Shown: positions 1,660 to 49,821 of the stretch, piece by piece | Layout of the letters: each line of letters opens with the position of its first letter | How positions within the stretch are numbered: the stretch's first letter is position 1 | Virus record (IMG/VR): IMGVR_UViG_3300047095_000752 | Coordinates: 1-64,000 of that record | Reading direction: 5' to 3' (one strand) | Length of the DNA stretch: 64,000 nt | Made by a program: the position numbers and the translations under genes | The notes under the pieces: model-generated | Seen by the model: only the letters and a program-made list of their open reading frames with translations | Told to the model about the DNA's origin: nothing | The model's database searches: none

Positions 1660-1936
1660 CGTTCACCTTTGTAAACCATATACATTTTACCGTATACTTT
1701 GATGACCGAAGTCGGTCGACTATAAATTCAATTTTACGCCCAACATTATTTCCAAGTTCATCAGAAATGTCCGTTGTATAAAATAAATAAAATAAAGTCT
1801 TCGCAAATTTTAGAATTAATTGTTCAAGACTACAACATAGTTCGTATATAATAACACTGAGTTTATAATTACACTGCGTCATAACTTGTTTTAAACCATA
1901 TACCATCAAAATTTTCGTTATAAGTAGGTATTTCAA
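1652..1936 (-). CDS. Small hypothetical protein (true start probably near 1882)
   Basis: ORF in an overlapping chain; the internal Met in MTQCNYK lies near the stop of the upstream gene. Confidence 0.45.
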   Translation of the reverse strand: MKYLLITKILMVYGLKQVMTQCNYKLSVIIYELCCSLEQLILKFAKTLFYLFYTTDISDELGNNVGRKIEFIVDRLRSSKYTVKCIWFTKVNDG

Positions 1937-3101: not shown

Positions 3102-3119
3102 TATTCAATATATATAATG

Positions 3120-4433
3120 CTAATGAGATTCCGTTTGTTCACCAGATCGAATTATGTAAAATACTGATATCAATTTAAATATTTTTCGCATCAAATGTGT
3201 CTTATTGGTTACTGGATCTATATGTTCATATAAGTCATTTTCCAAAGAGCGAACCACAATTCCTTCCCGACCTTTGAATTGATTCTTGTTCAACATACTA
3301 TGGTGCACTAAGGTGGTCGGACCATCTACATATTCTTCAAGGACACCTTCGTAGTACGGACCTTTATATAGACACTTCACACATGGTAAATTAAATGCTT
3401 TTGTATACGATTCTAATATATCGATGTGTTGATATTTACCATTAATTGTAATATCGAAGAATTTATATTCTTTAGCTGTACAACCATAATTCATATCTTG
3501 AACGCCGTTACCATATATTTCACCATATAGAACAATGTCATCACCCCCAGATCCGCCATGTCCCTGTGATATAGATTCTGCGAATCCCCTATTATTATTC
3601 CTAAGATTATACAATAGATCTTTAACTCGTGAATCTAATATCGGTAGTAAATATAGATCGACGTATGGTGTTTCGGCTATGTTAAAAATAGTATTGAAAT
3701 AGGGCACATTATTATATAGAGAATTTATAATTTTACTTTTCCAGCAGTTATTAAATATATTGGTATGGTATTTGAATAAGGTTTTCTTTTTAAATTTTAC
3801 ACTGAATTCTCTAACAATCTTTAACTGAGTGGTATGACTTCCTGCAACAAATTCAAATTTACCTTTAGGGTTCTTAACATACCCCGCCCGGAAGTTTGTA
3901 CCGTGTATTTTCTCAGTTATATAAATCGTTTCACCTCCACTAAAAGCTCCGGGATAATTTCTATAATTTTCAATACCAGTGTAATTCGTGAACGTACCAT
4001 ATTGATTTACGATATACACATTAGAGTCGTACCCAGCAGTTTCATAATTATATGCGTTATAATATTTAGTTTTATCATCACCTACCTTGTCACCGGCTTC
4101 AATGTGTATGGCAAATCCAAAACTGGGTTCCGCCCTTATATTCGCCGCCATTATTCTAACGTGTGTATCAGCCATAACATGCCCCGAAGGGAGTGTCCCA
4201 CAATATTTGGTTATCTCCCATTTATCCGTCCATTCTCTTGGGACTAGACTGTTCGGTGGGAAATATATAATTGGATCATTTACTTTATACTTACCTTTTG
4301 GTACAATTACCCACCACCCATTGATTCGGATCTTCTCTAATAAATCCGCATTTGGGTGTTTTTGTACATCTGATATAGTTTCTACTTTTACAGCAAAAGT
4401 TGACATGAAGTTCCTTTCTTTACCGATATCCAT
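3120..4433 (-). CDS. RNA ligase, DRB0094/Rnl5 family (start probably near 4406)
   Basis: N-terminal HPNADLLE OB-type module, motif I TEKIHGTN, YGEIYG, FFDI, EGIVVR and the C-terminal KIFK. Confidence 0.88.
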   Translation of the reverse strand: MDIGKERNFMSTFAVKVETISDVQKHPNADLLEKIRINGWWVIVPKGKYKVNDPIIYFPPNSLVPREWTDKWEITKYCGTLPSGHVMADTHVRIMAANIRAEPSFGFAIHIEAGDKVGDDKTKYYNAYNYETAGYDSNVYIVNQYGTFTNYTGIENYRNYPGAFSGGETIYITEKIHGTNFRAGYVKNPKGKFEFVAGSHTTQLKIVREFSVKFKKKTLFKYHTNIFNNCWKSKIINSLYNNVPYFNTIFNIAETPYVDLYLLPILDSRVKDLLYNLRNNNRGFAESISQGHGGSGGDDIVLYGEIYGNGVQDMNYGCTAKEYKFFDITINGKYQHIDILESYTKAFNLPCVKCLYKGPYYEGVLEEYVDGPTTLVHHSMLNKNQFKGREGIVVRSLENDLYEHIDPVTNKTHLMRKIFKLISVFYIIRSGEQTESH

Positions 4434-4731
4434 GATTTTGAGTATAAATTTGAGCTACACTTTTCCGGCGAGTATATAACACTTGTGCAATCGGACCTGC
4501 TATATTAGCACTATATGTAACCCCGAGTATTATACTACGAGTGAAATAATTTAATTTTAAAAAACTTAATGTAAATATACGATTTTTATATTTTCGGCGA
4601 CTATTACATCTTGATGTTATACACATATCATTTTTAGATTTTGTTATAACTTTAGACATGAGAAATATTAATTTACGAATTGAACTCAAACATAAGTTTT
4701 TGTCAACCTGCGATAAAATGGATTTATTCAT
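4420..4731 (-). CDS. Small hypothetical protein
   Basis: 103 aa ORF with a GGAG-type RBS upstream. Confidence 0.45.
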   Translation of the reverse strand: MNKSILSQVDKNLCLSSIRKLIFLMSKVITKSKNDMCITSRCNSRRKYKNRIFTLSFLKLNYFTRSIILGVTYSANIAGPIAQVLYTRRKSVAQIYTQNHGYR

Positions 4732-4742
4732 GAGTTCTCCTA

Positions 4743-4774
4743 TGGGCGCGGATCTAATATTGATCCGCGCCCAT
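4743..4774. terminator. GC-rich hairpin after the Hen1-ligase gene
   Basis: Inverted repeat atgggcgcggatc-taatatt-gatccgcgcccat. Confidence 0.5.
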
Positions 4775-4783
4775 CTATTTATA

Positions 4784-6988
4784 TTACAACGTTTTATCGA
4801 CTACACCAACAGAACTCATTCCGAGAAATGCAGCCACATACTTGAGTCTAGTCTCATGCCGATTATTCAAGAATGCATCTAATATTATTTTAGAGCATTC
4901 AAATTCTTGAATAGCAAGTCCACGCTTTTTAGCGACTTGGCGATGTGTTATATTTTTGAAATATTCTTCATTTTCATATAGAGGGAGTCCGTAAGTCAAA
5001 TTTAAATACTTATGTCCCCGGACTTTAAGAGCGGGTTGGATATAATATCCGGATGGTAATACACTTGAAAAATTATTCAATGGTTTATATACAAACCCTT
5101 CGAGTAAAGGTAGATCTGGATATGTATTGAAGGTAAGAGTTTCAGAAGGAGAACTACCGCAACGAGAGAGCCAGTCCAGTGTATTGTTTGCCATATCGTG
5201 TTCATCCGTTATAACGGTATATTTGCATGGCTTTAGTATTTTACAATCATCTGATATGATATCTATGTATTTCATCATATCCAAATTAGACATTGTATAA
5301 CCGTGTATAAGAGATCTTTTATGCTTGGTACCGATAGCAAGTACATGAAATGGTCGAATTTCAATATCAGTTTCTTTAGTAAATTCGTTGAGTGTATTCA
5401 ACACGGTCTCAACATACGCCGTATCCTTACCAGAATGTATATTGGATAGATATTGGGATTCGATTGCTGCGTAGAATTGCTCGTTAAGCATTGTTTTTGC
5501 AGCGTACGACCAAGGTAGAAGCTCAGCATCCAGAATAATAAAGGACACTTCCATCCCGATTTTTTCTTCAAGGGCGCTTATATTTTTTGATATTTCTGAA
5601 TGTAGGACGAGCTTTATATTTTGTTCATCTTCATTCTTGAAAAATTCAAATCCACCACGAGAATTTATTATAAGGGTTTTATCGTACCCTTTTTCTTGAG
5701 CAGCTTCAAAATTCTTAAACCACAATATTTGAGTTCGAGAACCCATATACTTAGTCTGTTGAATTAATTTAGTTACGCCACGCTCTCTGTAGTATTTAAA
5801 CGCACCCAGAGGATGTTCAATATAAGAGTCGAATTGTCCGTATAAAGTTCTATAATAGTCGAGTTTATTTTCTGGAAGTAGATGCTCCTTAAGAGTCTCA
5901 ACCGGAGACACTGTAGGTGCCATGTAAAATATATTCTTCGAGTTACTTATGAATGCACGTGACGTATACCCACGCCCAATTTCCTTCTGAGATACAGAGT
6001 AATCAGACACAGGGAGGTATATGTTACCTTGCATTTTATTCAAATTTTTAAGAGATTTAAAGTCGATCTGTCGTTCAATTTTATTTTTTCGAGGTTTTCT
6101 ATAATCGGTTGTGTCAAGAGTCCATTCGAGAATTCGCTCAGGACTCCATTCGGTTGGATCAACTTGTATTGAAAATATCCTATCTTCAACTTCACCTTCT
6201 TTTGGCGGATATGGTTTTGATATTGTTATCTTGTTATCTATAAGAGATTTATGTGTAGCGAATATACAGAAGGAGGGCTGCATATTCTCAAATTCTTCAG
6301 TCGGTTCTATTATATCAATATATTCAATATTGTATAAGTCGGATAGATAACTAACCACTTCGCGGCTAAATTGGTCTTTTGTGTATTCGACGCAATGGTC
6401 TCGCCGACGGAGGCTACCCGGCTCTATCGAATAGAATTTATTGAATTCAATATTAGGGGTAGTTAGATATAAATACTTCGGTACAAATATGTTTTTAATT
6501 AAATCTAAAATTTTAATACGATCACCATATTCAAAGTGCTCAATAGCTTCCACACAAGTCAATAGATCGGGGAGACAATCGCTTATAGTTATATTTGGGT
6601 ATAGTATATTACTTTCAATTACACGAACTTTATCAGTTGTTTTTATCTTTTTTATTTTATAAAAATCCTTTTCAATTCCAAGGATTCTAAGTTTCGGATG
6701 TTCTTTTACCAACATCTCCAACAGTTTACCTTCGGAAGTACACAGGTCCACCATGTACTCAATTTCAGGCATATCATTGAGTTTATTACATATCAATTCA
6801 TGTCTTTTCTGATGTAACGATATCTTCTTATCAACCAGTTCAGCTACAGATACTGGTGGGGTATATCCAAATTCTTGCTTAAATTTTTGCTTTAATGTTT
6901 TGTTATCTTGACAGAATTTGTTCATAATCATAGAGAAGTTTTTAGAATATCTTCTAACCGTAGTTGAATCGTTATCCGACATCTTCAT
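4784..6988 (-). CDS. Fusion of Hen1 RNA 2'-O-methyltransferase domain and Pnkp adenylyltransferase (RNA ligase) domain
   Basis: Hen1 MTase motifs DLCTSEG, VEAIEH, TTPNIEFN and RRDHCVEYT. Pnkp-ligase motifs YMAPTVSP, IEHP..AF.YY, KYMGSR, LDAELLPW, EGFVYKP, QPALKVRG..YL..TYG, KR.LA..EF and terminal DKTL. Confidence 0.85.
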   Translation of the reverse strand: MKMSDNDSTTVRRYSKNFSMIMNKFCQDNKTLKQKFKQEFGYTPPVSVAELVDKKISLHQKRHELICNKLNDMPEIEYMVDLCTSEGKLLEMLVKEHPKLRILGIEKDFYKIKKIKTTDKVRVIESNILYPNITISDCLPDLLTCVEAIEHFEYGDRIKILDLIKNIFVPKYLYLTTPNIEFNKFYSIEPGSLRRRDHCVEYTKDQFSREVVSYLSDLYNIEYIDIIEPTEEFENMQPSFCIFATHKSLIDNKITISKPYPPKEGEVEDRIFSIQVDPTEWSPERILEWTLDTTDYRKPRKNKIERQIDFKSLKNLNKMQGNIYLPVSDYSVSQKEIGRGYTSRAFISNSKNIFYMAPTVSPVETLKEHLLPENKLDYYRTLYGQFDSYIEHPLGAFKYYRERGVTKLIQQTKYMGSRTQILWFKNFEAAQEKGYDKTLIINSRGGFEFFKNEDEQNIKLVLHSEISKNISALEEKIGMEVSFIILDAELLPWSYAAKTMLNEQFYAAIESQYLSNIHSGKDTAYVETVLNTLNEFTKETDIEIRPFHVLAIGTKHKRSLIHGYTMSNLDMMKYIDIISDDCKILKPCKYTVITDEHDMANNTLDWLSRCGSSPSETLTFNTYPDLPLLEGFVYKPLNNFSSVLPSGYYIQPALKVRGHKYLNLTYGLPLYENEEYFKNITHRQVAKKRGLAIQEFECSKIILDAFLNNRHETRLKYVAAFLGMSSVGVVDKTL

Positions 6989-7610
6989 TTCCTTCGTCGA
7001 GCCAAGTTTTAGAGATTGTAATTAATTTATCAACAAATGCTTCATGTGCTGTATATATTCCACCGCGCCGGATAGTCAAAAATAACGATAATACATATGC
7101 CTTCTGTATGAATTCCGATGTCGTCATAGCTTCTTTTGGATTTAATTTCAACATAAAGCACGAACGCATTTCAATCGTCGATTCAACACTTGATGCATTA
7201 ATGTTGTAATCATCAAATAGCTTTACCGAGAATTCTAAGTCGTTCACAATCGGACCAATTATTATTTCTTGATTTTGCGTTTTTTGAAAAAATTGTTCGT
7301 CGGTTATATCACCTTTCGGTGGTCGTCCCGCGATGCAAGACCGTAGGGTTTCCCATAGTGCTTTTAGATGATACGGACATGCTGCAGCAACTTCTGAATT
7401 CAAATAGAAATCTAAATTCAATTGTCGTGCAACTTTTAAGAATTGCATATCATCTAATTCGGTTTTAATTTCATATTGCGTATCTACCCCGTTGACGAAT
7501 TGACCCGTGAATTTAAGTCCACGCAGGTCCTGTTCAAATGGGGGAGAATTTGGATTCTTAACTAATATATAAGATAAATGTGGTATATCACTTTTTATTG
7601 AAAAATACAT
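6972..7610 (-). CDS. Hen1 N-terminal (ligase-activating, Hen1_L-like) domain
   Basis: LSYILVKNP resembles DLGYLLHKHP; AYVL...VDKL....WL matches the end of the Hen1 N-domain; it lies directly upstream of the Hen1 MTase. Confidence 0.72.
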   Translation of the reverse strand: MYFSIKSDIPHLSYILVKNPNSPPFEQDLRGLKFTGQFVNGVDTQYEIKTELDDMQFLKVARQLNLDFYLNSEVAAACPYHLKALWETLRSCIAGRPPKGDITDEQFFQKTQNQEIIIGPIVNDLEFSVKLFDDYNINASSVESTIEMRSCFMLKLNPKEAMTTSEFIQKAYVLSLFLTIRRGGIYTAHEAFVDKLITISKTWLDEGNEDVG

Positions 7611-7611
7611 A

Positions 7612-9603
7612 TCAACCCTTTCCTATTCGTTCCAAAAATTCATCTTCAGATATAATTGTAATACCCTTAGATGCGGCTTTGGCTAACTTTGCCCCGGCAT
7701 TCTCACCGACTACAAGAAGAGTAGTCTTTGACGTTACCGATTTATCAACTTTACCACCGTTCTCCAAAATGAGTTCGTGGATACGGGGGCGGGGAGTGAA
7801 CAAGACCCCTGTCACACAAACCAGTTCACCAGCGAAGGCGTCCGATTTTGCTACAGTATTCATAGTCTCATTTTCATCAACTTTCATGTTAAATCCATAA
7901 GATACAAGATCTAATATAAGCTTTTCATTTTTATATTCTCTAAACCAATTATAAATACTATTTGCAACAACATCACCAATTCCATCTATAGACTTTAAAT
8001 CTTCTACTTTCTGAGATCTTAATGTTTGAATATCCTTGAATGTATTTGCAAGAAGAGAAGATGTTGTTTTACCAGTATTGGGAATTTGTAACCCAGCTAA
8101 TACTTTTTCAAATGGCATATTTTTTGATTTTTGAATGCTATTATATATATTTTTAGAAGACTTTTCAGCCATACCGTCGAGTTGGCAAATATCATCCGGT
8201 GTCATATCATATAGATCTATTATGTTATGAATCATATTTGCATCATACATTTTATCAACTATAGCGTCACCAAGACCATCAATGTCCATCACATCTTTGG
8301 ATGCCCAGTATAACACTTTACCTACGATTTTTCCAAGACAATCTGGATTCTGACATATAAGAGCTACATTATCATTATCATTAGCAACATCAAAACAACA
8401 TACCGGACATAATTCTGGTCGTTCAAATTTTTCCAAATTTTTCCCAATACGATTTTCCATGTTAACATATAATATCTGAGGGATAATTTCACCGGCTTTT
8501 TTAATACCGACAATATCTCCGATTCTTATATCCAGTTTCTCTACTTGATCAAAATTGTGGAGAGAAGCCTTAGCTACAACGGATCCACATATCTCAACAG
8601 GTTCAAGTATAGCTACCGGAGTCAGTGCGCCGGACTTACCAACCTGAACATCTATGTTCAATACTTTAGTTTCTTCAATTTCTTCTGCATATTTATAAGC
8701 GACTAACCATTTCGGGTGACTTGATGTATCTTTGAATTTAGAGCGACTTGCTATATCATTTATCTTAACGACAACACCATCAACCGGGTACGGAAGTGTA
8801 GTTTTATTTGCACCAAATTTATCAATAACAGATTTTAAGTTATCACCACCATTTACAATTTCATACTCGGGAGTCTTAAACCCAAGATCTTTTATTGTGC
8901 TTAATACTTGAAATTGATTTGTTAAGCCATGTTGTAACGGATCAACGATATCATATGCTATCATTGATAATTTACTTTGTTTCGATATTTTTGAATCTTT
9001 TCTTTTCAATGCTCCGGCGGCTGCATTTCTTGGATTTGCTAATAATTGTTCACCATTCAATTTTTTGTTACGATTTAATCCTTCAAATACTTTAAATGAC
9101 ATATATACTTCACCACGAATTTCAACGATATTATTCATACTATTAGGAATACTTAATGGAACTCCATTAATAACTTTTACATTTTCAATAACATTTTCAC
9201 CGATAGTTCCATTACCCCGAGTGAGAGCTTTAGTCAAAATTGAATTTTCATATATCAATGATATAGCCAACCCATCGATTTTATACTCAACCGAATATTC
9301 ATCTGATACTAATTTTGATTTTTTAGTAAATGAGTCCAATTCTTTAACCGAATATACCTTTTCTATACTCATCATCTTTTTAGAATGTTTTATTTTTTCG
9401 AATTCACTTACAGGGTCAGAGCCAATTCGTTGGGATGGAGAATCTGATATATAAGCACTGGGGTTATTTCTCTCATATTCAAGTAATTGATTGAACTTTT
9501 TATCATATTCTTCATCTGATATAATTGGATTAGAATCGTTATAGTATAAACAACTGTGTTTGTTCAACTCACTCTTAAGACTGCAGTACTCTTGGTTTGT
9601 CAT
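7612..9603 (-). CDS. ligA: NAD-dependent DNA ligase
   Basis: YY..SNP.ISDEEYD, KIDG adenylation motif, TRGNG, EIRGE, NPRNAAAG, C4 zinc finger, HhH repeats and BRCT domain. Start moved to MTNQEY at 9603. Confidence 0.96.
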   Translation of the reverse strand: MTNQEYCSLKSELNKHSCLYYNDSNPIISDEEYDKKFNQLLEYERNNPSAYISDSPSQRIGSDPVSEFEKIKHSKKMMSIEKVYSVKELDSFTKKSKLVSDEYSVEYKIDGLAISLIYENSILTKALTRGNGTIGENVIENVKVINGVPLSIPNSMNNIVEIRGEVYMSFKVFEGLNRNKKLNGEQLLANPRNAAAGALKRKDSKISKQSKLSMIAYDIVDPLQHGLTNQFQVLSTIKDLGFKTPEYEIVNGGDNLKSVIDKFGANKTTLPYPVDGVVVKINDIASRSKFKDTSSHPKWLVAYKYAEEIEETKVLNIDVQVGKSGALTPVAILEPVEICGSVVAKASLHNFDQVEKLDIRIGDIVGIKKAGEIIPQILYVNMENRIGKNLEKFERPELCPVCCFDVANDNDNVALICQNPDCLGKIVGKVLYWASKDVMDIDGLGDAIVDKMYDANMIHNIIDLYDMTPDDICQLDGMAEKSSKNIYNSIQKSKNMPFEKVLAGLQIPNTGKTTSSLLANTFKDIQTLRSQKVEDLKSIDGIGDVVANSIYNWFREYKNEKLILDLVSYGFNMKVDENETMNTVAKSDAFAGELVCVTGVLFTPRPRIHELILENGGKVDKSVTSKTTLLVVGENAGAKLAKAASKGITIISEDEFLERIGKG

Positions 9604-9626
9604 ACATTTTTTCCTTAAAAAAATAA

Positions 9627-9660
9627 GGAGGGAGTAATAGCAAAATGCTATCACTCCCTC
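9627..9660 (-). terminator. Hairpin terminator downstream of the GC-rich gene
   Basis: gagggagtaatagca-aaa-tgctatcactccctc with an A-run on its left (U-tract on the minus strand). Confidence 0.55.
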
Positions 9661-9738
9661 TATATCACAGGGGATGCTGCTGATGTTTATATTTTGTTTT
9701 TATTTTTGGGATATATGTATCAAAGACTGTATGGGATG

Positions 9739-10773
9739 TCAGTCTTCGGCATTCAACTTTTTATGTTGCCCGATCTTGGGGACGTTGAAACCCAAGTCGG
9801 TCAGGAGGGCACCCATCGCGGAGTGTCCCTCGTAGCGAGATGCACCCTTCGCGACCGCGCCCTCATCCATGCGGGTCGCAATCATGCGACGCCACACGGC
9901 GAACATCGCAGCCAGTTGCTGCGACTGGGCGGTGACAAATACCCCGGTGTCCACCACAATGCTGGTGGTGTGGTGGTAATTGCCCTCCAGCCATGGACGC
10001 GAACGCCATGCGTTGGGATCGAGATCCCAGCCGCAGTTACTGTACATGGCGGGCACGTACCCTGCCGCCTTCATGAACGCATCCGAGCCGTGCTGCTCGT
10101 ATGCCTTCAAGACCCAACCCGCGTGACCGGAGATGACAGACATCTCCTCAACATGGTGAGCCATGTTGCGGTGGTCATTGAACGACTTCATGATGTTGAG
10201 GCGTTCCTTCCAGTTCGCCTTGATGGCGACTTGGTACGTGCAGTGCGCTGCACAGCGCACTCGGAAGGACATGACCTGCCCATCCGCGCTGAACTCTCCC
10301 CGCATGATGGGGGAAGACAACGTCCGCTGGGCGTTGTCCGGTTTCGTGTAGACCACACGCATCTGCTGCTGCAGATGCCCCGCACCGGCGGGGATGGACT
10401 CGGGAAAGCGAGACCGGTGCGGATCAAGCTGCCACCCGTTCGCTTCCACGAACTCGTGGAGCTTCCTGTCGTATTGACACGACAGCAACTCCGCCGGGAT
10501 GATGGGGTAGTTCTTCAGAACCACCTCTTCCGCCACAGCGTTGAACTCTTTCTTGGTCAGCTTGTACTGACCATCACTGTTGTGCGCCACCTTTCGAATG
10601 GCATGGCTGGACACCGGGTCCAACGCCACGTTGTCGAAGGCGAGCACCGTATCCGACAACGGGCTGAACGTCAGTCCGTGGTGGGCGATGTCTGCTTCGG
10701 GCGTGTTGTTGATTGCGTCCATCAGATTGTTGAATTGCATGCTTAACATCTCCTGTAAAGATTTTACCGACAC
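9739..10773 (-). CDS. GC-rich hypothetical protein, probable early gene
   Basis: 344 aa ORF; a sampled 60-nt line is 62% GC against about 25% in flanking genes; motif A promoter directly upstream. Confidence 0.75.
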   Translation of the reverse strand: MSVKSLQEMLSMQFNNLMDAINNTPEADIAHHGLTFSPLSDTVLAFDNVALDPVSSHAIRKVAHNSDGQYKLTKKEFNAVAEEVVLKNYPIIPAELLSCQYDRKLHEFVEANGWQLDPHRSRFPESIPAGAGHLQQQMRVVYTKPDNAQRTLSSPIMRGEFSADGQVMSFRVRCAAHCTYQVAIKANWKERLNIMKSFNDHRNMAHHVEEMSVISGHAGWVLKAYEQHGSDAFMKAAGYVPAMYSNCGWDLDPNAWRSRPWLEGNYHHTTSIVVDTGVFVTAQSQQLAAMFAVWRRMIATRMDEGAVAKGASRYEGHSAMGALLTDLGFNVPKIGQHKKLNAED

Positions 10774-10801
10774 ATAGAATCTATCCCATAAGATTCTTTT
10801 A

Positions 10802-10821
10802 CAATAATTTATATATATAAT
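10802..10821 (-). promoter_or_regulatory. Phage promoter motif A (minus strand A(T/C)TATATATAT(A/T)AA(T/A)TATTG)
   Basis: caataatttatatatataat; about ten near-identical copies, almost all intergenic. Confidence 0.7.
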
Positions 10822-10845
10822 AGAATCAAAAATACTATATATATT

Positions 10846-11883: not shown

Positions 11884-12408
11884 TCAATGTTCCTTGTACA
11901 GTATTTTCAACTTATTTATATTCTTCAGCGGGACATCCACCCCACGCGAAGTCTTCGTAGACCCAATCTGCTCGTCCTCTACACTCATGATCAAGTCCTT
12001 CAAGGTCTTCGAAGAAATTTGACCATGATACAGGGATATTTTCTTGGGTTTGGATTTGCTGATGAATTTCTTCATTTTGGTTGCTGTGTTCAATATATAT
12101 TTGTAGAGATACAAGCAGGGTAGCCTTTCCGATTGTATCATCCGGTAGTGGTTCGAGAAGATGCTAGACTTCGATACCGAATCGACTATATTCCCAAGGG
12201 AATCGCCTCTTGGTATAATGTTGTTTATAATCTTTAGTTGATTGTCAACATATTCGACGAGACTTTTATTCGAAGTCTTATCCCGGTTATTCACAATGAG
12301 ATTAACCGTTAGCTTCGGGTCGTTATGAAGGAGTTGATTTAGTATGAAGAATTTCGGATTCCCAGCAAACTTGATAAATAACACATCCAACTTAGCAACT
12401 GTGTTCAA
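11884..12408 (-). CDS. Hypothetical protein
   Basis: 174 aa ORF with a GAGGAG RBS. Confidence 0.6.
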   Translation of the reverse strand: MNTVAKLDVLFIKFAGNPKFFILNQLLHNDPKLTVNLIVNNRDKTSNKSLVEYVDNQLKIINNIIPRGDSLGNIVDSVSKSSIFSNHYRMIQSERLPCLYLYKYILNTATKMKKFISKSKPKKISLYHGQISSKTLKDLIMSVEDEQIGSTKTSRGVDVPLKNINKLKILYKEH

Positions 12409-12424
12409 TCTATGATTCTCCTCG

Positions 12425-12454
12425 AAAAAAAGCGCCCTCGGAATTGAGGGCGCT
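12425..12454 (-). terminator. Rho-independent terminator
   Basis: aaaaaa-agcgccctc-ggaatt-gagggcgct. Confidence 0.75.
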
Positions 12455-12465
12455 ACGGCTGGTGG

Positions 12466-12579
12466 TTAGATTAAGGCATTCTCGCCGTCATCGCGAGCAC
12501 GAGACCGGAACTTGTTATAGTTACGATCCATTTTCCGCCCATATATTAGATTATACAACCAATAACTTACGTACCGCAT
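12466..12579 (-). CDS. 37-aa peptide MRYVSYWLYNLIYGRKMDRNYNKFRSRARDDGENALI (absent from the ORF track)
   Basis: AGGAG RBS 8 nt before the ATG; terminator directly after the stop. Confidence 0.55.
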   Translation of the reverse strand: MRYVSYWLYNLIYGRKMDRNYNKFRSRARDDGENALI

Positions 12580-12603
12580 TTTCAATCTCCTACGAGTTTG
12601 AAT

Positions 12604-12746
12604 TGGTCCCCGGTGAGAAACTCAGGTACTTGCGAAACCTGTTTCTTCTTTTCCCATGAATTCGTGTACTTGTACACACCGAAGCCCAAGCTTACCACCC
12701 GCCCTAGAAGGACTCACGAAGTGGAATGTGTCATACAAGCGGGACC
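12604..12746 (-). ncRNA. Candidate structured RNA or 5' leader, about 140 nt
   Basis: The ends pair (GGUCCC/GGGACC); internal hairpin GAAA-CAGGU...ACCUG-AG-UUUC; lies below a motif A promoter with no long minus-strand ORF. Confidence 0.4.
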
Positions 12747-12805
12747 TCAAATTCATGCTCTGGTGGATTATCCAGTTGGACCGGAGTTAGTACATAGTCC
12801 AGATT

Positions 12806-12825
12806 CAATAATTAATATATATAGT
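12806..12825 (-). promoter_or_regulatory. Phage promoter motif A
   Basis: caataattaatatatatagt. Confidence 0.7.
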
Positions 12826-12855
12826 TTAAAATGTTATTTTGAAAGGGTTATTAAG

Positions 12856-13571: not shown

Positions 13572-13647
13572 TGGTACGAACGGTGTGAATCGAACACACG
13601 ACTCAGAGTATATAAGACTCCGCTTCTCACCACTGAATTACGTTCGC
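13572..13647 (-). tRNA. tRNA-Ile(UAU)
   Basis: Cloverleaf GCGAACG...GGAGT-CT TAT AT-ACTCT...GTGTG TTCGATT CACAC CGTTCGT ACCA. Confidence 0.88.
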
Positions 13648-13690
13648 ATAAAAATAGGTGGGGAGGCTATCCTTTATGACAGACTCCCCA

Positions 13691-13767
13691 TGGTGATCGC
13701 GGTGGAATTCGAATCCACACTGTAAGATTTTTAAGATCTTTGCCTCGACCAGTTGGGCTACGCGACC
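13691..13767 (-). tRNA. tRNA-Leu(UAA) with a short variable loop
   Basis: GGTCGCG...AAGAT-CT TAA AA-ATCTT ACAGT GTGGA TTCGAAT TCCAC CGCGATC ACCA. Confidence 0.85.
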
Positions 13768-13786
13768 ATTATTAAACTTTCTAAAA

Positions 13787-13860
13787 TAACCCGACAGGAC
13801 TTTCACCTGCAGTTCGTAACCATTTAGTAGGAGTGTGTTTAATATTTTCACCACGGGTTA
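13787..13860 (-). ncRNA. tRNA-like element with an unpaired anticodon arm (pseudo-tRNA)
   Basis: Acceptor stem TAACCCG/CGGGTTA and T arm GCAGG-TGAAAGT-CCTGT are intact; no anticodon stem; no CCA. Confidence 0.5.
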
Positions 13861-13864
13861 TTCT

Positions 13865-13937
13865 TGAGAATGACTGGATTTGAACCAGCGACACGACGAT
13901 GACTTTCGTCTGCTCTACCAGACTGAGCTACAATCTC
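13865..13937 (-). ncRNA. tRNA-like element with an aberrant 6-nt anticodon loop
   Basis: GAGATTG TA GCTC..GAGC A GACGA-AAGTCA-TCGTC GTGTC GCTGG TTCAAAT CCAGT CATTCTC. Confidence 0.65.
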
Positions 13938-13973
13938 AATAGTTTTAATAGAGAATTAACTCTATGTTTTTGA

Positions 13974-14048
13974 TGGCTCTAGGGATTCGAGTCGAACGAA
14001 TAACGGGGAATTTAACAGATTCCTGCTCTCCCATTGAGCTACCCTAGA
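13974..14048 (-). tRNA. tRNA-Asn(GUU)
   Basis: TCTAGGG...GGAAT-CT GTT AA-ATTCC...CCCTAGA GCCA. Confidence 0.9.
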
Positions 14049-14058
14049 AAAGTTTTAT

Positions 14059-14760
14059 TCAAATATGAGACCACGTTTTTCTTTGAATTATTTTTTTAAT
14101 GTTATTATCGCTAACATTAAACATTTCACCTAATTTAACATAATTCTTTATTTCTGGGTATAACTTACGTATTTCTAATACTTGTTGTTTGGTGAGTTTG
14201 TTTGATATATAATTTGGATTGCCTTTTCTAGAGATTTTTTCTTTCGGCGGTATAGGTTCCCAGTGTAAATGTTTCCATCTTCTATTGTTAACAACTTCAC
14301 ATATAGTGCGTTGACCGACACCAAATAATTTACTTAATTTTTTCTGTGATATGTTATTGTTATTGTATATTTTTCTTATTTCTAATACTTGGTTATCGGT
14401 TAATCTAGAGCTTTTGCTATCTATACCTACGGCGTGGGTAATTAAATTATTTTTATGCGCATGTGTATTATTTTCTTTGACCGTACACCATTCTAGATTT
14501 TTGAGATCATTATTTGATTTATTACAATCCATATGATTTACAACGGCATCTTCGAACCAAGAGTCTGGATTAAAAGCGAACATTAGTAACCGATGGACCC
14601 GTAATTTTCTTCTTTTTGGTTTTAATGCTAAATGAACTGTATAATATCCACTATCTAAACTTGCTTTAACAAATTTACCACTATCATTATTCCGAACTCG
14701 ACCTAAATTACTAATAGAATATTTATCGGTTAAATGACAATCTCTCCAAATTTCTTCCAT
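14059..14760 (-). mobile_element. Free-standing NUMOD4-HNH homing endonuclease within the tRNA cluster
   Basis: EIWR...YSISNLGRVR, VHRL, VNHMDCNKSNN...NLEW...EN..HA, and two SxLTxxQVLEIRKxY HTH-like repeats. Confidence 0.88.
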
Positions 14761-14789
14761 ATATGATCCAATGCTACAATAAAAAATAA

Positions 14790-14866
14790 TGGTGCCAACA
14801 ACTGGATTTAAACCAGTAACTTACGATTTAGAAGATCGTTTCTCTATTCAATTGAGATATGCTGGC
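14790..14866 (-). tRNA. tRNA-Arg(UCU)
   Basis: GCCAGCA...ACGAT-CT TCT AA-ATCGT...TGTTGGC ACCA. Confidence 0.88.
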
Positions 14867-14881
14867 ATAGAAAACTTAAAA

Positions 14882-14958
14882 AGATATGGTGGTATGAATT
14901 ACACATACCGTCACACGGACCCGATGTCCGGTGTTTTATCCTTAAACTAACCATATCT
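14882..14958 (-). ncRNA. tRNA-like element with extended acceptor stem, 6-bp T stem and non-canonical anticodon loop
   Basis: AGATATGGT/ACCATATCT; D arm GTTT..AAAC; CGGAC-ATCGG-GTCCG; GGTATG-TGTAATT-CATACC. Confidence 0.55.
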
Positions 14959-14964
14959 AAAATT

Positions 14965-15042
14965 TGGAGCAGCGCCACTGACTTGCACAATGGATCATCC
15001 AACTGGAGTGCTGGATGGTTTTACTATTAAACTACGATCTGC
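14965..15042 (-). ncRNA. tRNA-like element ending in CCA, with long anticodon stem and 6-bp T stem
   Basis: GCAG..CG/CGCTGC TCCA; D arm GTTT..AAAC; ATCCAGC-ACTCCA-GTTGGAT; CCATTG-TGCAAGT-CAGTGG. Confidence 0.55.
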
Positions 15043-15059
15043 ATTGTAGATTCAATTGT

Positions 15060-15470
15060 TTCGGTCCCTGAAGACTTCTGGACCGACTTCACCATATGAC
15101 CGGGTAACTACGATGTCGGTATGTTAGCGACTCCGTCTACGCGACCGTCTTCGTGTGTATAAATAGTAGCATACCTCAAAAGCCCAAGTCAAGAGGTTTC
15201 TAAAATTTCACTTACACTGGTGAATCCGAACTGAGTTATAAATGGGAAAAAGCATCCGAAACCCGTTTACACACACTCAGCCATAATTTATAAGAGTACC
15301 GGTAAACGCAAGGCATTTACATCCCCGGTACTCCAAACCAAGCCACGTAGCTCAGTAAAGTCAAATAAAACATCGGGTATACCATAAAGTATACCCGATG
15401 GCTTCGCACCGATAGGGTACGAAAAATCCCACCAAGCCCACATGCGCTCCATGATGTTTATGATGGGATC
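15060..15470. ncRNA. Hairpin-dense non-coding tract, candidate ncRNA(s)
   Basis: Stems tcggtcc/ggaccga, ctgagt/actcag, gagtaccgg/ccggtactc and catcgggtatac/gtatacccgatg; no ORF in the track. Confidence 0.45.
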
Positions 15471-15475
15471 AAAAA

Positions 15476-15640
15476 GGTACCCGGATATCGGATTTGAACC
15501 GACGATCCACCTCTATCTATAGTTCGAGGTGACCCCTAGCTTCTATCAACACCTCATGTGACTAGCAAGGGTGTCTTCAAGATTCTTGTCTGACGTTCGG
15601 GAAGTCACTCCTTATATCAGACTCCTTTAGGACCGGGATA
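15476..15640 (-). ncRNA. Expanded tRNA-like RNA of about 165 nt
   Basis: Canonical T arm GTCGG-TTCAAAT-CCGAT; acceptor CCCGG/CCGGG; extra hairpins GTCTGA/TCAGAC and CACCTC/GAGGTG; directly below a motif A promoter. Confidence 0.55.
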
Positions 15641-15660
15641 GTTTAAACTTAAACTGTATA

Positions 15661-15680
15661 CAATATTTAATATATATAAT
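15661..15680 (-). promoter_or_regulatory. Phage promoter motif A driving the tRNA cluster
   Basis: caatatttaatatatataat. Confidence 0.7.
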
Positions 15681-15681
15681 A

Positions 15682-16263
15682 CTAAGCTCGTAAAGAAGCT
15701 ACACTAGCACTCATACTAGCGTATGCCGAGCGGGTTCCAACAGATGTAGGATCGTACTGTACAGTGTTATGAGTTTTGATCCCAAGACCACTACCAACGG
15801 CAAATGCGTCGATATTTGCGCCGGAGAAAATAAATTGCCAGTTGTATACTTCTTCTTGATGTGTGATTTTATTTTTAATATCATTCAATGTGAAATGACG
15901 ACTTGCATTTTCGTCACCATCTGTAATAATACAAATGATAACTTTTTCAGGTCTCTCTGGTTCCGGTAGTTTATTCAAATATACACCAATGTGATCTACA
16001 GTCTTTCCAATAGCATCGAATAAAGCTGTATACCCATTAGGTTGATAATTTTCTTTACTTAATAGTTCACAACTATTTAGATTTTCTACTTCACCGATAT
16101 CAACTTGAGTATCAAATATAGTTTTAATAATTTGAGCGGTTCCGGGTATTTTTCTTTGATCTTCAATAAGTGAATTATACCCGCCAATCGCATCATCTGT
16201 TAAAGAATGCATTGATCCGGACTTATCAACAATCATTCCAATTAGAGTATGGTCTTTCTTCAT
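15682..16263 (-). CDS. VWA-domain protein
   Basis: MIDAS motif DKSGSM, TALFDAIG, ITDGDENAS and WQFIFSGAN. Confidence 0.88.
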   Translation of the reverse strand: MKKDHTLIGMIVDKSGSMHSLTDDAIGGYNSLIEDQRKIPGTAQIIKTIFDTQVDIGEVENLNSCELLSKENYQPNGYTALFDAIGKTVDHIGVYLNKLPEPERPEKVIICIITDGDENASRHFTLNDIKNKITHQEEVYNWQFIFSGANIDAFAVGSGLGIKTHNTVQYDPTSVGTRSAYASMSASVASLRA

Positions 16264-16448
16264 TGTGTTGTTCCTTGTGTGTTTTGTTGTTAGTTGCTTA
16301 TATGGATTGTATCACATGATTTGTAGATTTGCAAGTGGATTAAAATAACTTTACTATAATTTTCATTATTATTTACTACAAAAAAGAATGGCTTTGCTAG
16401 AGCCATTCTTCCAACCATTCTTTCTAACCTAACTATACAACCGGCGAA

Positions 16449-16610
16449 CTACAACCGGCGACCCTTCTCCAGCGCCTTCTCCAGTTCTTTTTCGCGATTA
16501 GACCCCCATTTTTCCTCCCTCAAATTCCTGCAAAAGGCGTCGCGCTGCGCCTTTTCTTCGTCCCGCCGCTGTTCGTTCCGCGCCTTTTCTTCATCTGCAC
16601 GCTCTGACAT
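16449..16610 (-). CDS. 53-aa highly charged GC-rich peptide (absent from the ORF track)
   Basis: MSERADEEKARNEQRRDEEKAQRDAFCRNLREEKWGSNREKELEKALEKGRRL; sits between a motif A promoter and a terminator-like hairpin. Confidence 0.55.
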   Translation of the reverse strand: MSERADEEKARNEQRRDEEKAQRDAFCRNLREEKWGSNREKELEKALEKGRRL

Positions 16611-16685
16611 TTTTATACCCTTTCATCGTTTGTTTATAATATCTCAGTTCACATGAGCCGAGGATATCGAATAACTTCATGATAG

Positions 16686-16786: not shown

Positions 16787-16862
16787 TGGTAGACCGTGTA
16801 AGAATTGAACTTACGACTCCGTGTATATAAGACGCGGCTTCTAACCACTGAATTAACGGTCC
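16787..16862 (-). tRNA. tRNA-Ile(UAU), second diverged copy
   Basis: GGACCGT...CGCGT-CT TAT AT-ACACG...GTAAG TTCAATT CTTAC ACGGTCT ACCA. Confidence 0.85.
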
Positions 16863-16874
16863 ATCGAATGGTTG

Positions 16875-17460
16875 TAAAACCCTGAGTGCTATCCGGCGAA
16901 GGCTAGCACTCAGGGGGTCTGACTACACATTCCTATGCACTGGGAGTCGCACATAGGTCTTTCGTAGGAGCCCTCGCCAAAGAGCCTACTAGTGTAGAAA
17001 TATCATAGCCCGGTGAGTAGGCGGGGATAGACGCTACTCACCGGGTGGTGCTCTTGGACTTAGTCTGTGTGGACTTAGTCACTGAGCAAGATTTTAAAGA
17101 CTTTCGTCTTGAGTTGAAATTTACGACTTCTTGAAATCTTAGAGAAGTCGTAGTATCGTATACCATCTCGTGCACCGTCGAATCCAAAGGGCTGCATTCC
17201 CCTTTGCGGAAGGATTCGATGGTATGGTGATTTCCGGAACACTGTTCCGCGATACCGTTGTGTGGATTCGCGTGGAGTCAGTCACGCTGGTAGTGCGGCT
17301 GGGGGACAGCCGATGAGGGGAAAAGAAAGTCCAGCCAAGGAGTTATGTGCAGGGCTTTGGCAAACCCTTTGGGAGACTCCTTGGCTGGATAATTAAAAAG
17401 CTTCAACCCAGACAATGACTCTGAACCCAAGTGGAAGGAAATGGGTTATGCGACCAGAAT
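16875..17460. ncRNA. Large, highly structured non-coding element of about 600 nt
   Basis: GC-rich, no ORF in the track, many long stems: cctgagtgcta/tagcactcagg, cccggtgagtag/ctactcaccggg, tacgacttct/agaagtcgta, tcgaatcc/ggattcga, tccagccaaggagt/actccttggctgga. Confidence 0.6.
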
Positions 17461-23810: not shown

Positions 23811-23830
23811 CAATATTTAATATATATAAT
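23811..23830 (-). promoter_or_regulatory. Phage promoter motif A
   Basis: caatatttaatatatataat. Confidence 0.7.
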
Positions 23831-23864
23831 ACTTGCGTTCCATGGTATAAGCCGTGTAAAATAA

Positions 23865-49802: not shown

Positions 49803-49821
49803 AAACCTTTATACTGACAAT

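What the first reader, a model, noticed from the sequence alone, without database searches (positions are those of the whole stretch)
15476..15640. A 165-nt RNA with a perfect tRNA T-arm and acceptor but a greatly expanded interior
Seen: this is the first element after the 15661 promoter. The 3' end reads GUCGG-UUCAAAU-CCGAU-AUCCGGG-UACC and the 5' end CCCGG. The D-arm position is replaced by two larger hairpins, and a CACCUC/GAGGUG arm carries a 12-nt loop. It is too short for tmRNA and too long for tRNA. It could be a tRNA-mimic class akin to bacterial Y RNAs (YrlA), an intron-like interrupted tRNA needing the phage ligases, or a new ncRNA.
Basis: partly seen in the sequence, partly recalled or inferred. 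Interest (0 to 1): 0.7.

Follow-up and report, generated by a model that had tools for sequence, protein, structure and literature searches.

The report
Phage tRNA-shaped RNA that cannot decode
A lake-water giant phage carries, among its tRNA genes, a conserved 162-base RNA gene with the acceptor stem and T arm of a tRNA but a non-tRNA body. It resembles the still unexplained "species 1" RNA of phage T4 and is probably a tRNA mimic, not a working tRNA.

Summary
On the minus strand, 15637-15476 encodes an RNA closed by a CCCGG/CCGGG stem stacked on a canonical T arm (GUCGG-UUCAAAU-CCGAU). The interior has three further hairpins. It has no D arm and no 7-nt anticodon loop.

ARAGORN and Rfam (E up to 10) do not recognise it. 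No ORF overlaps it.

It is a real gene. Two related lake-phage contigs carry it at the same place, at 99.4% and 71% identity. Against the 71% copy, 11 base pairs change on both sides and stay paired; controls with slid partners give 0-2. That copy has a perfect 7-bp acceptor stem and lies 9 nt upstream of tRNA-Arg.

It sits 20 nt downstream of a 21-nt phage promoter motif that occurs 18 times in the genome.

The intron-interrupted tRNA, tmRNA, YrlA/Y RNA and attP-remnant readings were tested and not supported.

The closest analogue is T4 rnaC (species 1 RNA), which shares the architecture and the tRNA-cluster location. Covariance models detect no homology in either direction.

The likely mechanism is inferred: it matures like a tRNA (RNase P, 3' trimming) and then acts as a non-decoding tRNA mimic. 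The same window holds a large RNA-repair cassette. The function itself is untested.

The parts
15661..15681 (-). Phage promoter motif TATTATATATATTAAATATTG, directly upstream of the RNA
   Evidence: The 21-mer (up to 2 mismatches) occurs 18 times in the 245-kb record, 16 of them on the minus strand. The 41-nt block is 88% identical in L006, where the RNA itself is 71% identical. At another copy (10822-10802) an RNA-library contig starts 12 nt downstream.
15638..15660 (-). Leader ending ...AAACUAU, with U at -1 before the first C of the acceptor stem
   Evidence: The phage's six ARAGORN-called tRNA genes also have U at -1, and four of them share the leader ending ...UAU. The leader sequence diverges between lineages, whereas the RNA body is structurally conserved.
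15632..15637 (-). Acceptor-stem 5' strand CCCGG(U)
   Evidence: It pairs with 15480-15484. G4-C becomes A-U in L006, where the stem is a perfect 7 bp.
15623..15631 (-). Invariant CCUAAAGG(A): mini-hairpin or D-loop substitute
   Evidence: CCUAAAGG is invariant in all three lineages. RNAalifold pairs CC with GG.
15588..15622 (-). H2: two-part hairpin with a 7-bp lower stem, a 4x5 internal loop (AUAA / CGAAC), a 4-bp upper stem and an invariant UGAC loop
   Evidence: Six compensatory double changes and no disruptive change between the window and L006.
15567..15587 (-). Junction: conserved AAGAAUCYUGA followed by a variable stretch
   Evidence: Alignments. No conserved pairing was found for this stretch.
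15539..15566 (-). H4: hairpin with an invariant stem (GCU-A-GUCA / UGAU-RGA-AGC) and a variable 10-nt loop
   Evidence: The stem is 100% conserved, while 5 of the 10 loop bases differ between lineages. There is no covariation, so the pairing is predicted only.
15507..15532 (-). H5: 7-bp hairpin (U.G plus CACCUC/GAGGUG) with the 12-nt loop GAACUAUAGAUA
   Evidence: Three compensatory changes in the stem. The two loop changes keep a 6-nt palindrome (CUAUAG becomes CCAUGG).
15487..15503 (-). T arm GUCGG-UUCAAAU-CCGAU
   Evidence: The loop is a canonical T loop with the G53-C61 pair. There is one compensatory change (C-G to G-C) in L006 and one kept one-sided change (U-A to U-G) in L004.
15476..15486 (-). 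Acceptor 3' strand AUCCGGG, unpaired U, then ACC. No CCA is encoded.
   Evidence: GGGUACCUUUU is invariant in the three lineages; L004 has one U fewer in the run that follows. Five of the phage's six ARAGORN-called tRNAs encode CCA; this RNA and the odd tRNA at 13864-13938 do not.
15422..15475 (-). U run, then a 9-bp hairpin (AUCCCAUCA/UGGUGGGAU) followed by UUUUU: the probable terminator of the unit in this lineage
   Evidence: Read directly from the sequence. In L006 this place is taken by tRNA-Arg, 9 nt after the RNA.
15371..15400 (-). Second, strong intrinsic terminator (13-bp stem followed by a U run)

Best explanation
This is a real, independently transcribed gene for a non-decoding tRNA-like RNA of about 160 nt. 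It sits in the tRNA cluster of an uncultured freshwater jumbo phage.

Shown here:
- It has a conserved five-way fold: acceptor stem, H2, H4, H5 and T arm.
- The acceptor stem and T arm together make a tRNA-type 7+5-bp minihelix.
- It has no D arm and no 7-nt anticodon loop.
- A phage promoter motif lies directly upstream, and the 5' leader (U at -1) resembles those of the neighbouring tRNAs.
- In one lineage it lies 9 nt upstream of tRNA-Arg.

Inferred:
- Host RNase P cuts the precursor after U(-1).
- The 3' end is trimmed as for a tRNA, with or without CCA addition.
- The product is a stable tRNA-shaped RNA that cannot be read on the ribosome.
- It works as a tRNA mimic. The minihelix offers a tRNA-like handle, and the invariant non-tRNA parts (CCUAAAGG, the UGAC loop, CCGAACGU, AAGAAUC, the GCUAGUCACAU...UGAURGAAGCUAGG hairpin) engage a partner.

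My preferred concrete role is a decoy or adapter for a tRNA-binding protein in the conflict over tRNA cleavage. The phage is otherwise equipped for that conflict, with a kinase-like protein, an RNA ligase, a Hen1/Pnkp-type protein and an NAD-dependent ligase at 1869-9654. Functionally it is an analogue of T4 species 1 RNA (rnaC).
For: Structure and conservation:
- Homologues lie at the same locus in L004 (99.4%) and in L006, L007 and L008 (70.8%).
- 11 compensatory pairs against 0-2 in slid controls; 96% of cells paired.
- Independent MFE folds of the two lineages give the same acceptor stem, H2, H5 and T arm.
- It is single-copy in the genome.

Transcription unit:
- The promoter motif recurs 18 times.
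- The conserved block ends exactly at the stem's edges.

tRNA-type processing context:
- U at -1 and an ...AACUAU leader, as for the adjacent tRNAs.
- In L006 it is 9 nt upstream of tRNA-Arg.

Presence in RNA libraries:
- A metatranscriptome contig covers 15312-15581.
- The same library shows patchy, gene-specific coverage of this phage: present on 9669-10790 and 11971-12777; absent from the ligase, exonuclease, HNH and VWA genes.

Repair context: a kinase-like protein, an RNA ligase, a Hen1 methyltransferase fused to a Pnkp ligase domain, a Hen1 N domain and an NAD-dependent ligase.

T4 parallel: rnaC has a 7-position acceptor-like stem and a T arm at its 3' end, two long arms, and lies between tRNAs.
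Against: - Only two independent lineages are known, so all covariation comes from one comparison.
- Folding-energy z-scores are unremarkable (-1.6 and -0.95).
- No 5' or 3' ends were mapped.
- The only RNA-library contig is shallow (depth 2) and unstranded. It runs 164 nt past the predicted 3' end, so it shows a precursor, read-through or DNA, not the mature RNA.
- The near-identity between the window and L004 extends over 319 nt and may reflect recombination rather than selection.
- CCA is not encoded, and in this genome the closing stem is imperfect.
- Nothing tested here links the RNA to the repair genes or to any protein. The adjacent VWA gene has no such RNA next to it in six more distant relatives.
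- The decoy role is conjecture.
Confidence: 0.5

Rival explanations
1. It is a decayed or expanded tRNA gene, or a tRNA-like 'punctuation' signal. On this reading it serves only as an RNase P processing site or a stable transcript end and has no function in trans.
For: It lies in a mosaic tRNA cluster where genes are swapped and a homing HNH endonuclease is inserted. In this genome the acceptor stem has a 1-nt deletion and a U.U. No CCA is encoded.
Against: The non-tRNA hairpins H2 and H5 carry 9 of the 11 compensatory changes, and long single-stranded blocks are invariant across 29% overall divergence. The RNA has its own promoter rather than lying inside an mRNA.
Confidence: 0.13
2. It is a scaffold or regulatory RNA that works by base pairing. 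One version is homodimerisation through the palindromic H5 loop, as in kissing-loop RNAs. Another is antisense pairing through the variable H4 loop.
For: The two substitutions in the 12-nt H5 loop keep a 6-nt palindrome (CUAUAG becomes CCAUGG). The H4 loop is variable on an invariant stem.
Against: The two loop changes amount to a single event and could equally close a short extension of H5. Searches for complementary targets gave only the RNA's own gene and chance-level hits.
Confidence: 0.1
3. It is a Y RNA / YrlA-like RNA that forms an RNP with the upstream VWA-domain protein, which would act as a Ro60-like partner.
For: A 193-aa protein whose relatives are annotated as VWA proteins is encoded 42 nt upstream in all three lineages. 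YrlA RNAs also mimic tRNA (PMC4201824).
Against: There is no TROVE domain in the record and no RtcB. Rfam gives no hit at E up to 10. The ends form the acceptor stem, not a Ro-binding stem. More distant VWA homologues (L002, L003, L011, L028, L029, L030) have no such RNA beside them. The complex prediction job was not folded and gives no evidence either way.
Confidence: 0.05
4. It is an interrupted tRNA. An intron-like insert would be removed and the halves joined by the phage RNA ligases to give a working tRNA.
For: RNA ligase and Pnkp/Hen1-type genes lie 6-13 kb away on the same strand. The RNA has a tRNA acceptor stem and T arm.
Against: No single deletion of 60-109 nt gives a consistent ARAGORN tRNA in both lineages. 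There is no D-arm sequence and no 7-nt anticodon loop. The 'insert' itself is under structural selection. No joints were seen in the contigs, though that evidence is weak.
Confidence: 0.03
5. It is a miniature tmRNA or other ribosome-rescue RNA.
For: It has a tRNA-like domain without an anticodon arm, and the D arm is replaced by a short segment containing GG.
Against: Position 3:70 is C-G, not G.U. ARAGORN finds no tmRNA and the Rfam tmRNA families give no hit. The local hairpin H5, not a long-range P2 helix, precedes the T arm. No SmpB is encoded in the record.
Confidence: 0.02
6. It is an attP-type remnant of a host tRNA 3' end, used for integration.
For: Phage attachment sites often copy the T arm and acceptor 3' strand of a host tRNA.
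Against: No tyrosine integrase is found in the record. The only exact match to the T-arm/acceptor pattern in 185,579 species genomes lies inside a chemotaxis-receptor gene and is a chance hit. The 5' strand, 150 nt away, covaries with the 3' strand.
Confidence: 0.02

Closest known systems
Bacteriophage T4 species 1 RNA (rnaC; 139 nt; annotated 'small, stable RNA' in NC_000866)
   Same: - It is encoded inside the phage tRNA cluster next to tRNA-Arg and a homing endonuclease. In a Karamvirus it lies between tRNA-Trp and tRNA-Gly.
- Its 5' and 3' ends form an imperfect 7-position acceptor-like stem (CGAUUCG/CGUUUCG, with two U.U) stacked on a T arm (CCGGG-UUCGAAU-CCCGG). A hairpin sits just before the T arm, and the interior is expanded in place of D and anticodon arms.
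- An unpaired U followed by A comes after the stem, and no CCA is encoded.
- Its function is unknown (my own knowledge; the T4 record annotates it only as a small, stable RNA).
   Different: - No detectable homology. The model of this RNA does not hit the T4 region. A model built from four rnaC homologues does not hit the window, L004 or L006. blastn finds nothing.
- rnaC is a four-way junction with one very long arm. This RNA is a five-way junction with different invariant motifs.
- The host range differs: enterobacterial Tevenvirinae versus an uncultured lake jumbo phage.
Class II (long-variable-arm) tRNAs
   Same: Both have a five-way layout with a hairpin (here H5) a few nucleotides before the T arm, and a 7+5 acceptor/T minihelix. 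The only other weak hits of the model are the phages' tRNA-Leu genes (14-17 bits).
   Different: There is no D stem-loop and no 5-bp anticodon stem with a 7-nt loop. It is twice the length. It is not called by ARAGORN or by the Rfam tRNA and tRNA-Sec models.
tmRNA tRNA-like domain
   Same: Both have an acceptor stem and T arm without an anticodon arm. Both are expected substrates for RNase P.
   Different: There is no G3.U70, no P2 helix, no tag reading frame and no pseudoknots, and the RNA is 162 nt long. It is not detected by ARAGORN or Rfam.
Bacterial Y RNA YrlA (Chen et al. 2014, PMC4201824)
   Same: Both are non-coding RNAs of similar size that contain a tRNA-like T arm. YrlA is also found in some phages.
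   Different: In YrlA the termini form the Ro60-binding stem and the tRNA-like module is internal. YrlA is encoded next to rsr (TROVE). Neither holds here.

Membership tests
tRNA (RF00005) | Cloverleaf with a D arm and a 5-bp anticodon stem carrying a 7-nt loop | tested here: not met
   ARAGORN and Rfam at E up to 10 give no hit. The covariation-supported fold has no such arms.
tRNA (RF00005) | 7-bp acceptor stem stacked on a 5-bp T stem with a UUCRANY T loop | tested here: met
   L006 has 7+5 bp. The window has 5 bp followed by U.U, plus the 5-bp T stem. The T loop is UUCAAAU or UUCAACU and the G53-C61 pair is kept.
tRNA (RF00005) | 3' CCA encoded, as in five of the phage's six ARAGORN-called tRNAs | tested here: not met
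   The RNA ends GGG-U-ACC followed by a U run. Five of the six phage tRNAs encode CCA.
Intron-containing tRNA | Removing one contiguous insert restores a cloverleaf | tested here: not met
   About 2800 deletion variants per lineage gave 1 and 2 ARAGORN calls, at non-equivalent positions.
tmRNA | G3.U70 alanine identity, a tag ORF, and recognition by tmRNA models | tested here: not met
   Position 3:70 is C-G. ARAGORN finds no tmRNA. Rfam gives no hit.
YrlA / Y RNA | Encoded next to a Ro60 (TROVE) gene | tested here: not met
   PF05731 is absent from the 245-kb record, while the controls are positive. The record is 78% complete.
YrlA / Y RNA | The 5' and 3' ends form the Ro-binding stem, the tRNA-like module is internal, and the family model matches | tested here: not met
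   The ends form the acceptor stem. Rfam gives no hit at E up to 10.
T4 rnaC (species 1 RNA) | Located in a phage tRNA cluster, with an acceptor-like closing stem plus a 3' T arm and an expanded interior | tested here: met
T4 rnaC (species 1 RNA) | Sequence and structure homology to rnaC | tested here: not met
   R1 does not hit the T4 region. R2, built from 4 rnaC homologues, does not hit the window, L004 or L006.
T4 rnaC (species 1 RNA) | Released from a multi-gene precursor by host RNases P and E as a stable RNA | not testable with these tools
   Only context is available: U at -1, a tRNA-like leader, and tRNA-Arg 9 nt downstream in L006.

The most novel reading that the evidence does not exclude
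This RNA founds a new class of phage tRNA-mimic RNAs with an active role in the fight over tRNA integrity. It might be a bait that occupies or inhibits a host tRNA-directed nuclease or tRNA-surveillance factor. Or it might be an RNA cofactor for the phage's unusual Hen1/Pnkp/ligase repair set. T4 species 1 RNA would then be a convergent example of the same strategy.
Probability: 0.17. Interest if true: 0.78.

Novelty: new variant of a known kind. Interest (0 to 1): 0.5.

Why it matters
Stable tRNA-like RNAs in phage tRNA clusters have been known from T4 since the 1970s, and their function remains unknown.

A second, unrelated-in-sequence example in a distant jumbo phage suggests the design is recurrent rather than a T4 oddity. 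The design is a tRNA minihelix used as a processing or recognition handle, joined to a private structured body. This example has clear covariation and its own promoter, and it sits in a genome with a large RNA-repair cassette.

It also gives a compact, well-defined RNA of 162 nt, with known invariant motifs, that can be tested in vitro. Possible tests include RNase P cleavage, CCA addition, aminoacylation, and binding to tRNA-directed nucleases.

Finally, standard tRNA finders and Rfam miss this kind of gene, so phage tRNA clusters may hide more of them.

Tried and rejected
Searches that led nowhere:
- blastn and megablast of the element and its 6-kb surroundings against 50,697 phage records gave no match.
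- Four exact or degenerate pattern scans of IMG/VR gave 0 hits.
- One scan of JGI metagenomes gave 10 hits, all chance; none has the other motifs.
- Two scans of species genomes gave 0 hits and 1 chance hit inside an MCP gene.
- Relatives of the flanking exonuclease and of the 253-aa ORF were sought in IMG/VR and none was found. The protein database gave only the same two lineages.

Hypotheses tested and rejected:
- tRNA with an intron.
- tmRNA.
- YrlA / Ro RNP (and the six VWA contexts).
- attP remnant.
- Primer or template for a reverse transcriptase: no RVT_1 domain.
- Phage-encoded CCA-adding enzyme: no PolyA_pol head domain.
- Antisense targets of the loops.
- VIPR-type guide RNA: those come in repeat arrays, whereas this RNA is single-copy.

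Jobs that gave no evidence:
- The VWA-plus-RNA job was not folded and counts neither for nor against binding.

Alignment caveat: MAFFT and the covariance model both misalign the acceptor 5' strand of L006 by one base. The acceptor-stem pairs were therefore scored on a manual alignment.

Full report
WHAT IS THERE

The window is the first 64 kb of a 245-kb IMG/VR virus record, about 35% G+C and 78% complete. Public runs that hold it come from lake water.

The T arm GUCGG-UUCAAAU-CCGAU is followed at once by AUCCGGG-U-ACC. A CCCGG at the 5' end pairs with CCGGG. A CACCUC/GAGGUG hairpin carries a 12-nt loop.

ARAGORN finds six tRNA genes, all on the minus strand (13572-14866 and 16787-16862). It does not find this element and finds no tmRNA. 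The whole genome has only those six. Rfam 15 gives only the six tRNAs at gathering score. On 15200-15900 it gives nothing at all at E up to 10. No ORF of 30 aa or more overlaps the element.

IS IT REAL?

Folding energy alone is not persuasive. The z-score is -1.6 for the window copy and -0.95 for the relative.

The decisive evidence is comparative. DNA searches of phage records, IMG/VR, JGI metagenomes and species genomes found no homologue. The upstream 193-aa protein does have close relatives, and the contigs that encode them carry the element at the same place:
- L004:4624-4788, at 99.4% identity.
- L006:4633-4795 (identical in L007 and L008), at 70.8% identity.

I compared the window with L006 on a manual alignment that restores one indel in the acceptor strand. 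Eleven base pairs change on both sides and remain paired: 1 in the acceptor stem, 4 in H2a, 2 in H2b, 3 in H5 and 1 in the T stem. One more pair changes on one side and stays paired. Outside the acceptor-stem indel, the only pair lost in these helices is the first T-stem pair, which is G.U in the window and G.A in L006.

RNAalifold finds the same helices, also with 11 compensatory pairs. The pair-count tool gives 96% of cells paired. It gives 11 double changes against 0-2 when the 3' partners are slid by 1-3 columns, and 0 of 500 shuffles reach the observed value.

In L006 the closing stem is a perfect 7 bp (CCCAGUG/CACUGGG), which with the T stem gives the tRNA-type 7+5 minihelix. The window copy has 5 pairs, a U.U and a 1-nt deletion.

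One caveat applies: there are only two independent lineages. The 99.4% identity to L004 extends over 319 nt in a mosaic region, where tRNA-Ile is 100% identical but tRNA-Arg only 59.5%. It may therefore reflect exchange rather than selection.

ANATOMY

Positions are counted from C15637 = 1.
- Acceptor stem: 1-5(7) with 152(154)-158.
- Invariant CCUAAAGG: 7-14. It is either a 2-3-bp mini-hairpin or a D-loop substitute.
- H2: 16-50. A 7-bp stem, an AUAA/CGAAC internal loop, a 4-bp stem and an invariant UGAC loop.
- Junction: 21 nt, beginning with the conserved AAGAAUCYUGA.
- H4: 72-99. The stem sequence is invariant and the 10-nt loop differs at 5 of 10 positions. Its pairing is predicted only.
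- UAGGRG linker.
- H5: 106-131. A 7-bp stem and a 12-nt loop.
- Spacer: 3-4 nt.
- T arm: 135-151.
- Unpaired U159, then ACC and a U run.

The two substitutions in the H5 loop keep a 6-nt palindrome (CUAUAG becomes CCAUGG). This could mean a short extra helix or loop-loop dimerisation. It is a single event and I treat it only as a lead.

There is no D stem-loop and no 7-nt anticodon loop, so the RNA cannot decode.

TRANSCRIPTION AND PROCESSING CONTEXT

The 21-mer TATTATATATATTAAATATTG lies at 15681-15661. With up to 2 mismatches it occurs 18 times in the genome, 16 of them on the gene-rich minus strand. The block is conserved in L004 and L006. At the copy at 10822-10802, an RNA-library contig begins 12 nt downstream. 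I read the motif as the phage's promoter, which is an inference.

The leader ends ...AAACUAU before C1. The phage's six ARAGORN-called tRNA genes also have U at -1, and four of them share the leader ending ...UAU. U at -1 is the context bacterial RNase P prefers (established knowledge).

Conservation stops exactly at the edges of the closing stem plus the invariant GGGUACCUUUU.

In L006 tRNA-Arg(UCU) starts 9 nt after the element, so there the two share a precursor. In the window and in L004 a hairpin with a U run (15469-15422) and a strong terminator (15400-15371) follow instead.

Five of the six phage tRNAs encode CCA; this RNA and the odd tRNA at 13864-13938 do not. The record has no CCA-adding enzyme head domain.

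EXPRESSION

Two rRNA-depleted freshwater metatranscriptome runs from one sample hold pieces of this phage. The pieces lie at 9669-10790, 11971-12777 (depth up to 8.6), 14862-15099, 15312-15581, 16417-16631 and 16793-16900. Nothing lies on the ligase, exonuclease, HNH or VWA genes.

The patchiness argues for RNA rather than contaminating DNA. The piece at 15312-15581 covers the 3' 106 nt of the element and runs 164 nt beyond it.

These are shallow, unstranded assembler contigs. They show presence in an RNA library, perhaps as a precursor or read-through. They do not show a mature 160-nt species.

WHAT IT IS NOT

Interrupted tRNA:
- About 2800 single deletions in each lineage gave 1 and 2 ARAGORN calls, at non-equivalent positions.
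- The 'insert' is itself under structural selection.

tmRNA:
- Position 3:70 is C-G, and there is no tag frame, no P2 helix and no SmpB.
- ARAGORN and Rfam are silent.

YrlA / Y RNA:
- No TROVE or RtcB gene is present and Rfam gives no hit.
- The ends form the acceptor stem, not a Ro-binding stem.
- Relatives of the upstream protein are annotated as VWA proteins. Six more distant homologues have coding genes, not an RNA, beside them.

attP remnant:
- No integrase is present.
- The one exact match to the T-arm/acceptor pattern in the species genomes lies inside a chemotaxis-receptor gene on the other strand.

Reverse-transcriptase partner: no RVT_1 domain.

Antisense regulator: only self and chance-level complements were found.

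CLOSEST KNOWN

T4 rnaC ('species 1 RNA') is annotated in NC_000866 as a small stable RNA. It lies next to rnaD, tRNA-Arg and the segB homing endonuclease.

Its sequence shows the same design. The termini form a 7-position acceptor-like stem with two U.U pairs (CGAUUCG/CGUUUCG). A T arm (CCGGG-UUCGAAU-CCCGG) directly precedes the 3' strand. A 10-bp hairpin sits just before the T arm. One long arm replaces the D and anticodon arms. An unpaired U then A follows, and there is no CCA. The fold is strongly favoured (z = -4.6).

rnaC is present in 740 phage records. In a Karamvirus it sits between tRNA-Trp and tRNA-Gly. Four homologues show covariation in the T stem and the acceptor stem. rnaC is not in Rfam.

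Homology to the present RNA is not detectable. Model R1 (built from this RNA) does not hit the T4 region. Model R2 (built from rnaC) does not hit the window, L004 or L006. The relation is therefore one of kind and architecture, not family membership.

HOW IT MOST LIKELY WORKS

Shown: a conserved tRNA-type minihelix closing a private structured body, its own promoter motif, a tRNA-like leader, and location in the tRNA cluster.

Inferred from established knowledge of tRNA processing: RNase P recognises the acceptor/T stack and cuts after U(-1). Exonucleases trim the U-rich trailer, or, in L006, RNase P releases it at the 5' end of tRNA-Arg. The result is a stable tRNA-shaped RNA that cannot enter decoding.

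Conjecture: it acts as a mimic. It would present a tRNA-like handle to a tRNA-binding factor while its invariant elements bind something else or block the factor.

The context for that conjecture is an unusually complete RNA healing and sealing set on the same strand, 6-13 kb away:
- a 410-aa protein (1869-3101) with weak, below-cut-off matches to a P-loop kinase domain (AAA_33) and to part of a CCA-tRNA nucleotidyltransferase model;
- an RNA ligase (3120-4433);
- a protein joining a Hen1 methyltransferase region to a Pnkp ligase domain (4784-6988);
- a separate Hen1 N-terminal domain (6972-7610);
- an NAD-dependent ligase (7612-9654).

I rate the claims as follows:
- A genuine structured tRNA-like ncRNA gene: about 0.9.
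- tRNA-type maturation: about 0.65.
- A decoy or adapter role in the tRNA-damage conflict: about 0.2.

NOVELTY AND VERDICT

This is a new, sequence-unrelated variant of a known but unexplained kind: the tRNA-like stable RNAs of phage tRNA clusters.

Interest is moderate. The RNA is well supported and cleanly delimited, and it sits in a telling genomic context. But it is known from one small uncultured clade, and there is no functional evidence.

Noticed in passing
window 1869-9654 (minus strand): A large RNA-repair cassette. It holds a 410-aa protein with weak, below-cut-off matches to a P-loop kinase domain (AAA_33) and to part of a CCA-tRNA nucleotidyltransferase model (1869-3101), an RNA ligase (3120-4433), a 734-aa protein joining a Hen1 methyltransferase region to a Pnkp ligase domain (4784-6988), a separate Hen1 N-terminal domain (6972-7610) and an NAD-dependent DNA ligase (7612-9654). 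The domain split differs from the bacterial Pnkp/Hen1 pair.
   Followed up: partly
window 13864-13938 (minus); L004:5813-5888; L006:5577-5651: An odd tRNA gene, conserved in all three lineages, with U1-A72 and no encoded CCA. Its anticodon loop has 6 nt in the window and L006 (ARAGORN 'tRNA-???') but 7 nt (UGC) in L004, without the G3.U70 alanine identity pair.
   Followed up: partly
window 15040-15192 (minus); L004 and L006 counterparts: A second conserved non-coding unit between the element and tRNA-Arg. A sigma-70-like promoter (TTGACT-N18-TACTAT with an upstream TG) is followed by a conserved RNA of about 115 nt or more (e.g. CGGUCAUAUGGUGAAGUCGG...AAGUCUUCAGG). It has no Rfam hit, and an RNA-library contig covers 14862-15099.
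   Followed up: partly
window 12425-12826 (minus): A 447-nt gap without a convincing ORF. It starts with a copy of the phage promoter motif (about 12826-12806) and ends in an intrinsic terminator (about 12455-12425). It has the highest depth seen in the RNA library (contig 12461-12777, depth 8.6) and no significant Rfam match. It may be an abundant ncRNA of about 370 nt.
   Followed up: partly
whole record, e.g. window 10802-10822, 15661-15681, 23811-23831, 45192-45212, 49783-49803, 63010-63030: The 21-nt motif TATTATATATATTAAATATTG (up to 2 mismatches) occurs 18 times in 245 kb, 16 of them on the minus strand. It is a likely phage-specific promoter consensus.
   Followed up: partly
window 14059-14760 (minus): An HNH homing-endonuclease gene lies between tRNA-Arg and tRNA-Asn. 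In L004 the two tRNAs are 16 nt apart with no such gene, and the tRNA-Arg genes of the lineages are only 60-70% identical. The cluster is mosaic.
   Followed up: no
L004 about 5433-5520: L004 has an extra insert of about 88 nt, relative to the window, upstream of its tRNA-Arg. The insert contains a T-arm-like CUCAG-UUCAAUU-CUGAG. ARAGORN does not call it.
   Followed up: no
L006:3525-3545: A terminator hairpin shaped like a T arm (GGGG-UUCAAAU-CCCC followed by a U run) gave a weak hit of model R1. It is not a homologue of the element.
   Followed up: yes
window 15682-16263 (minus): The upstream 193-aa protein (phrog_7371; relatives annotated as VWA, YegL or ChlD-like) has homologues in 219 phage records, including Streptomyces, Microbacterium and Pseudomonas phages and jumbo phage XacN1. 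In one IMG/VR jumbo phage (L003) it also lies just downstream of a tRNA cluster.
   Followed up: partly
window 16417-16631 (minus): Both RNA libraries cover a small region holding a 53-aa ORF (16449-16610) upstream of the VWA gene. It is either an expressed small protein or another RNA.
   Followed up: no
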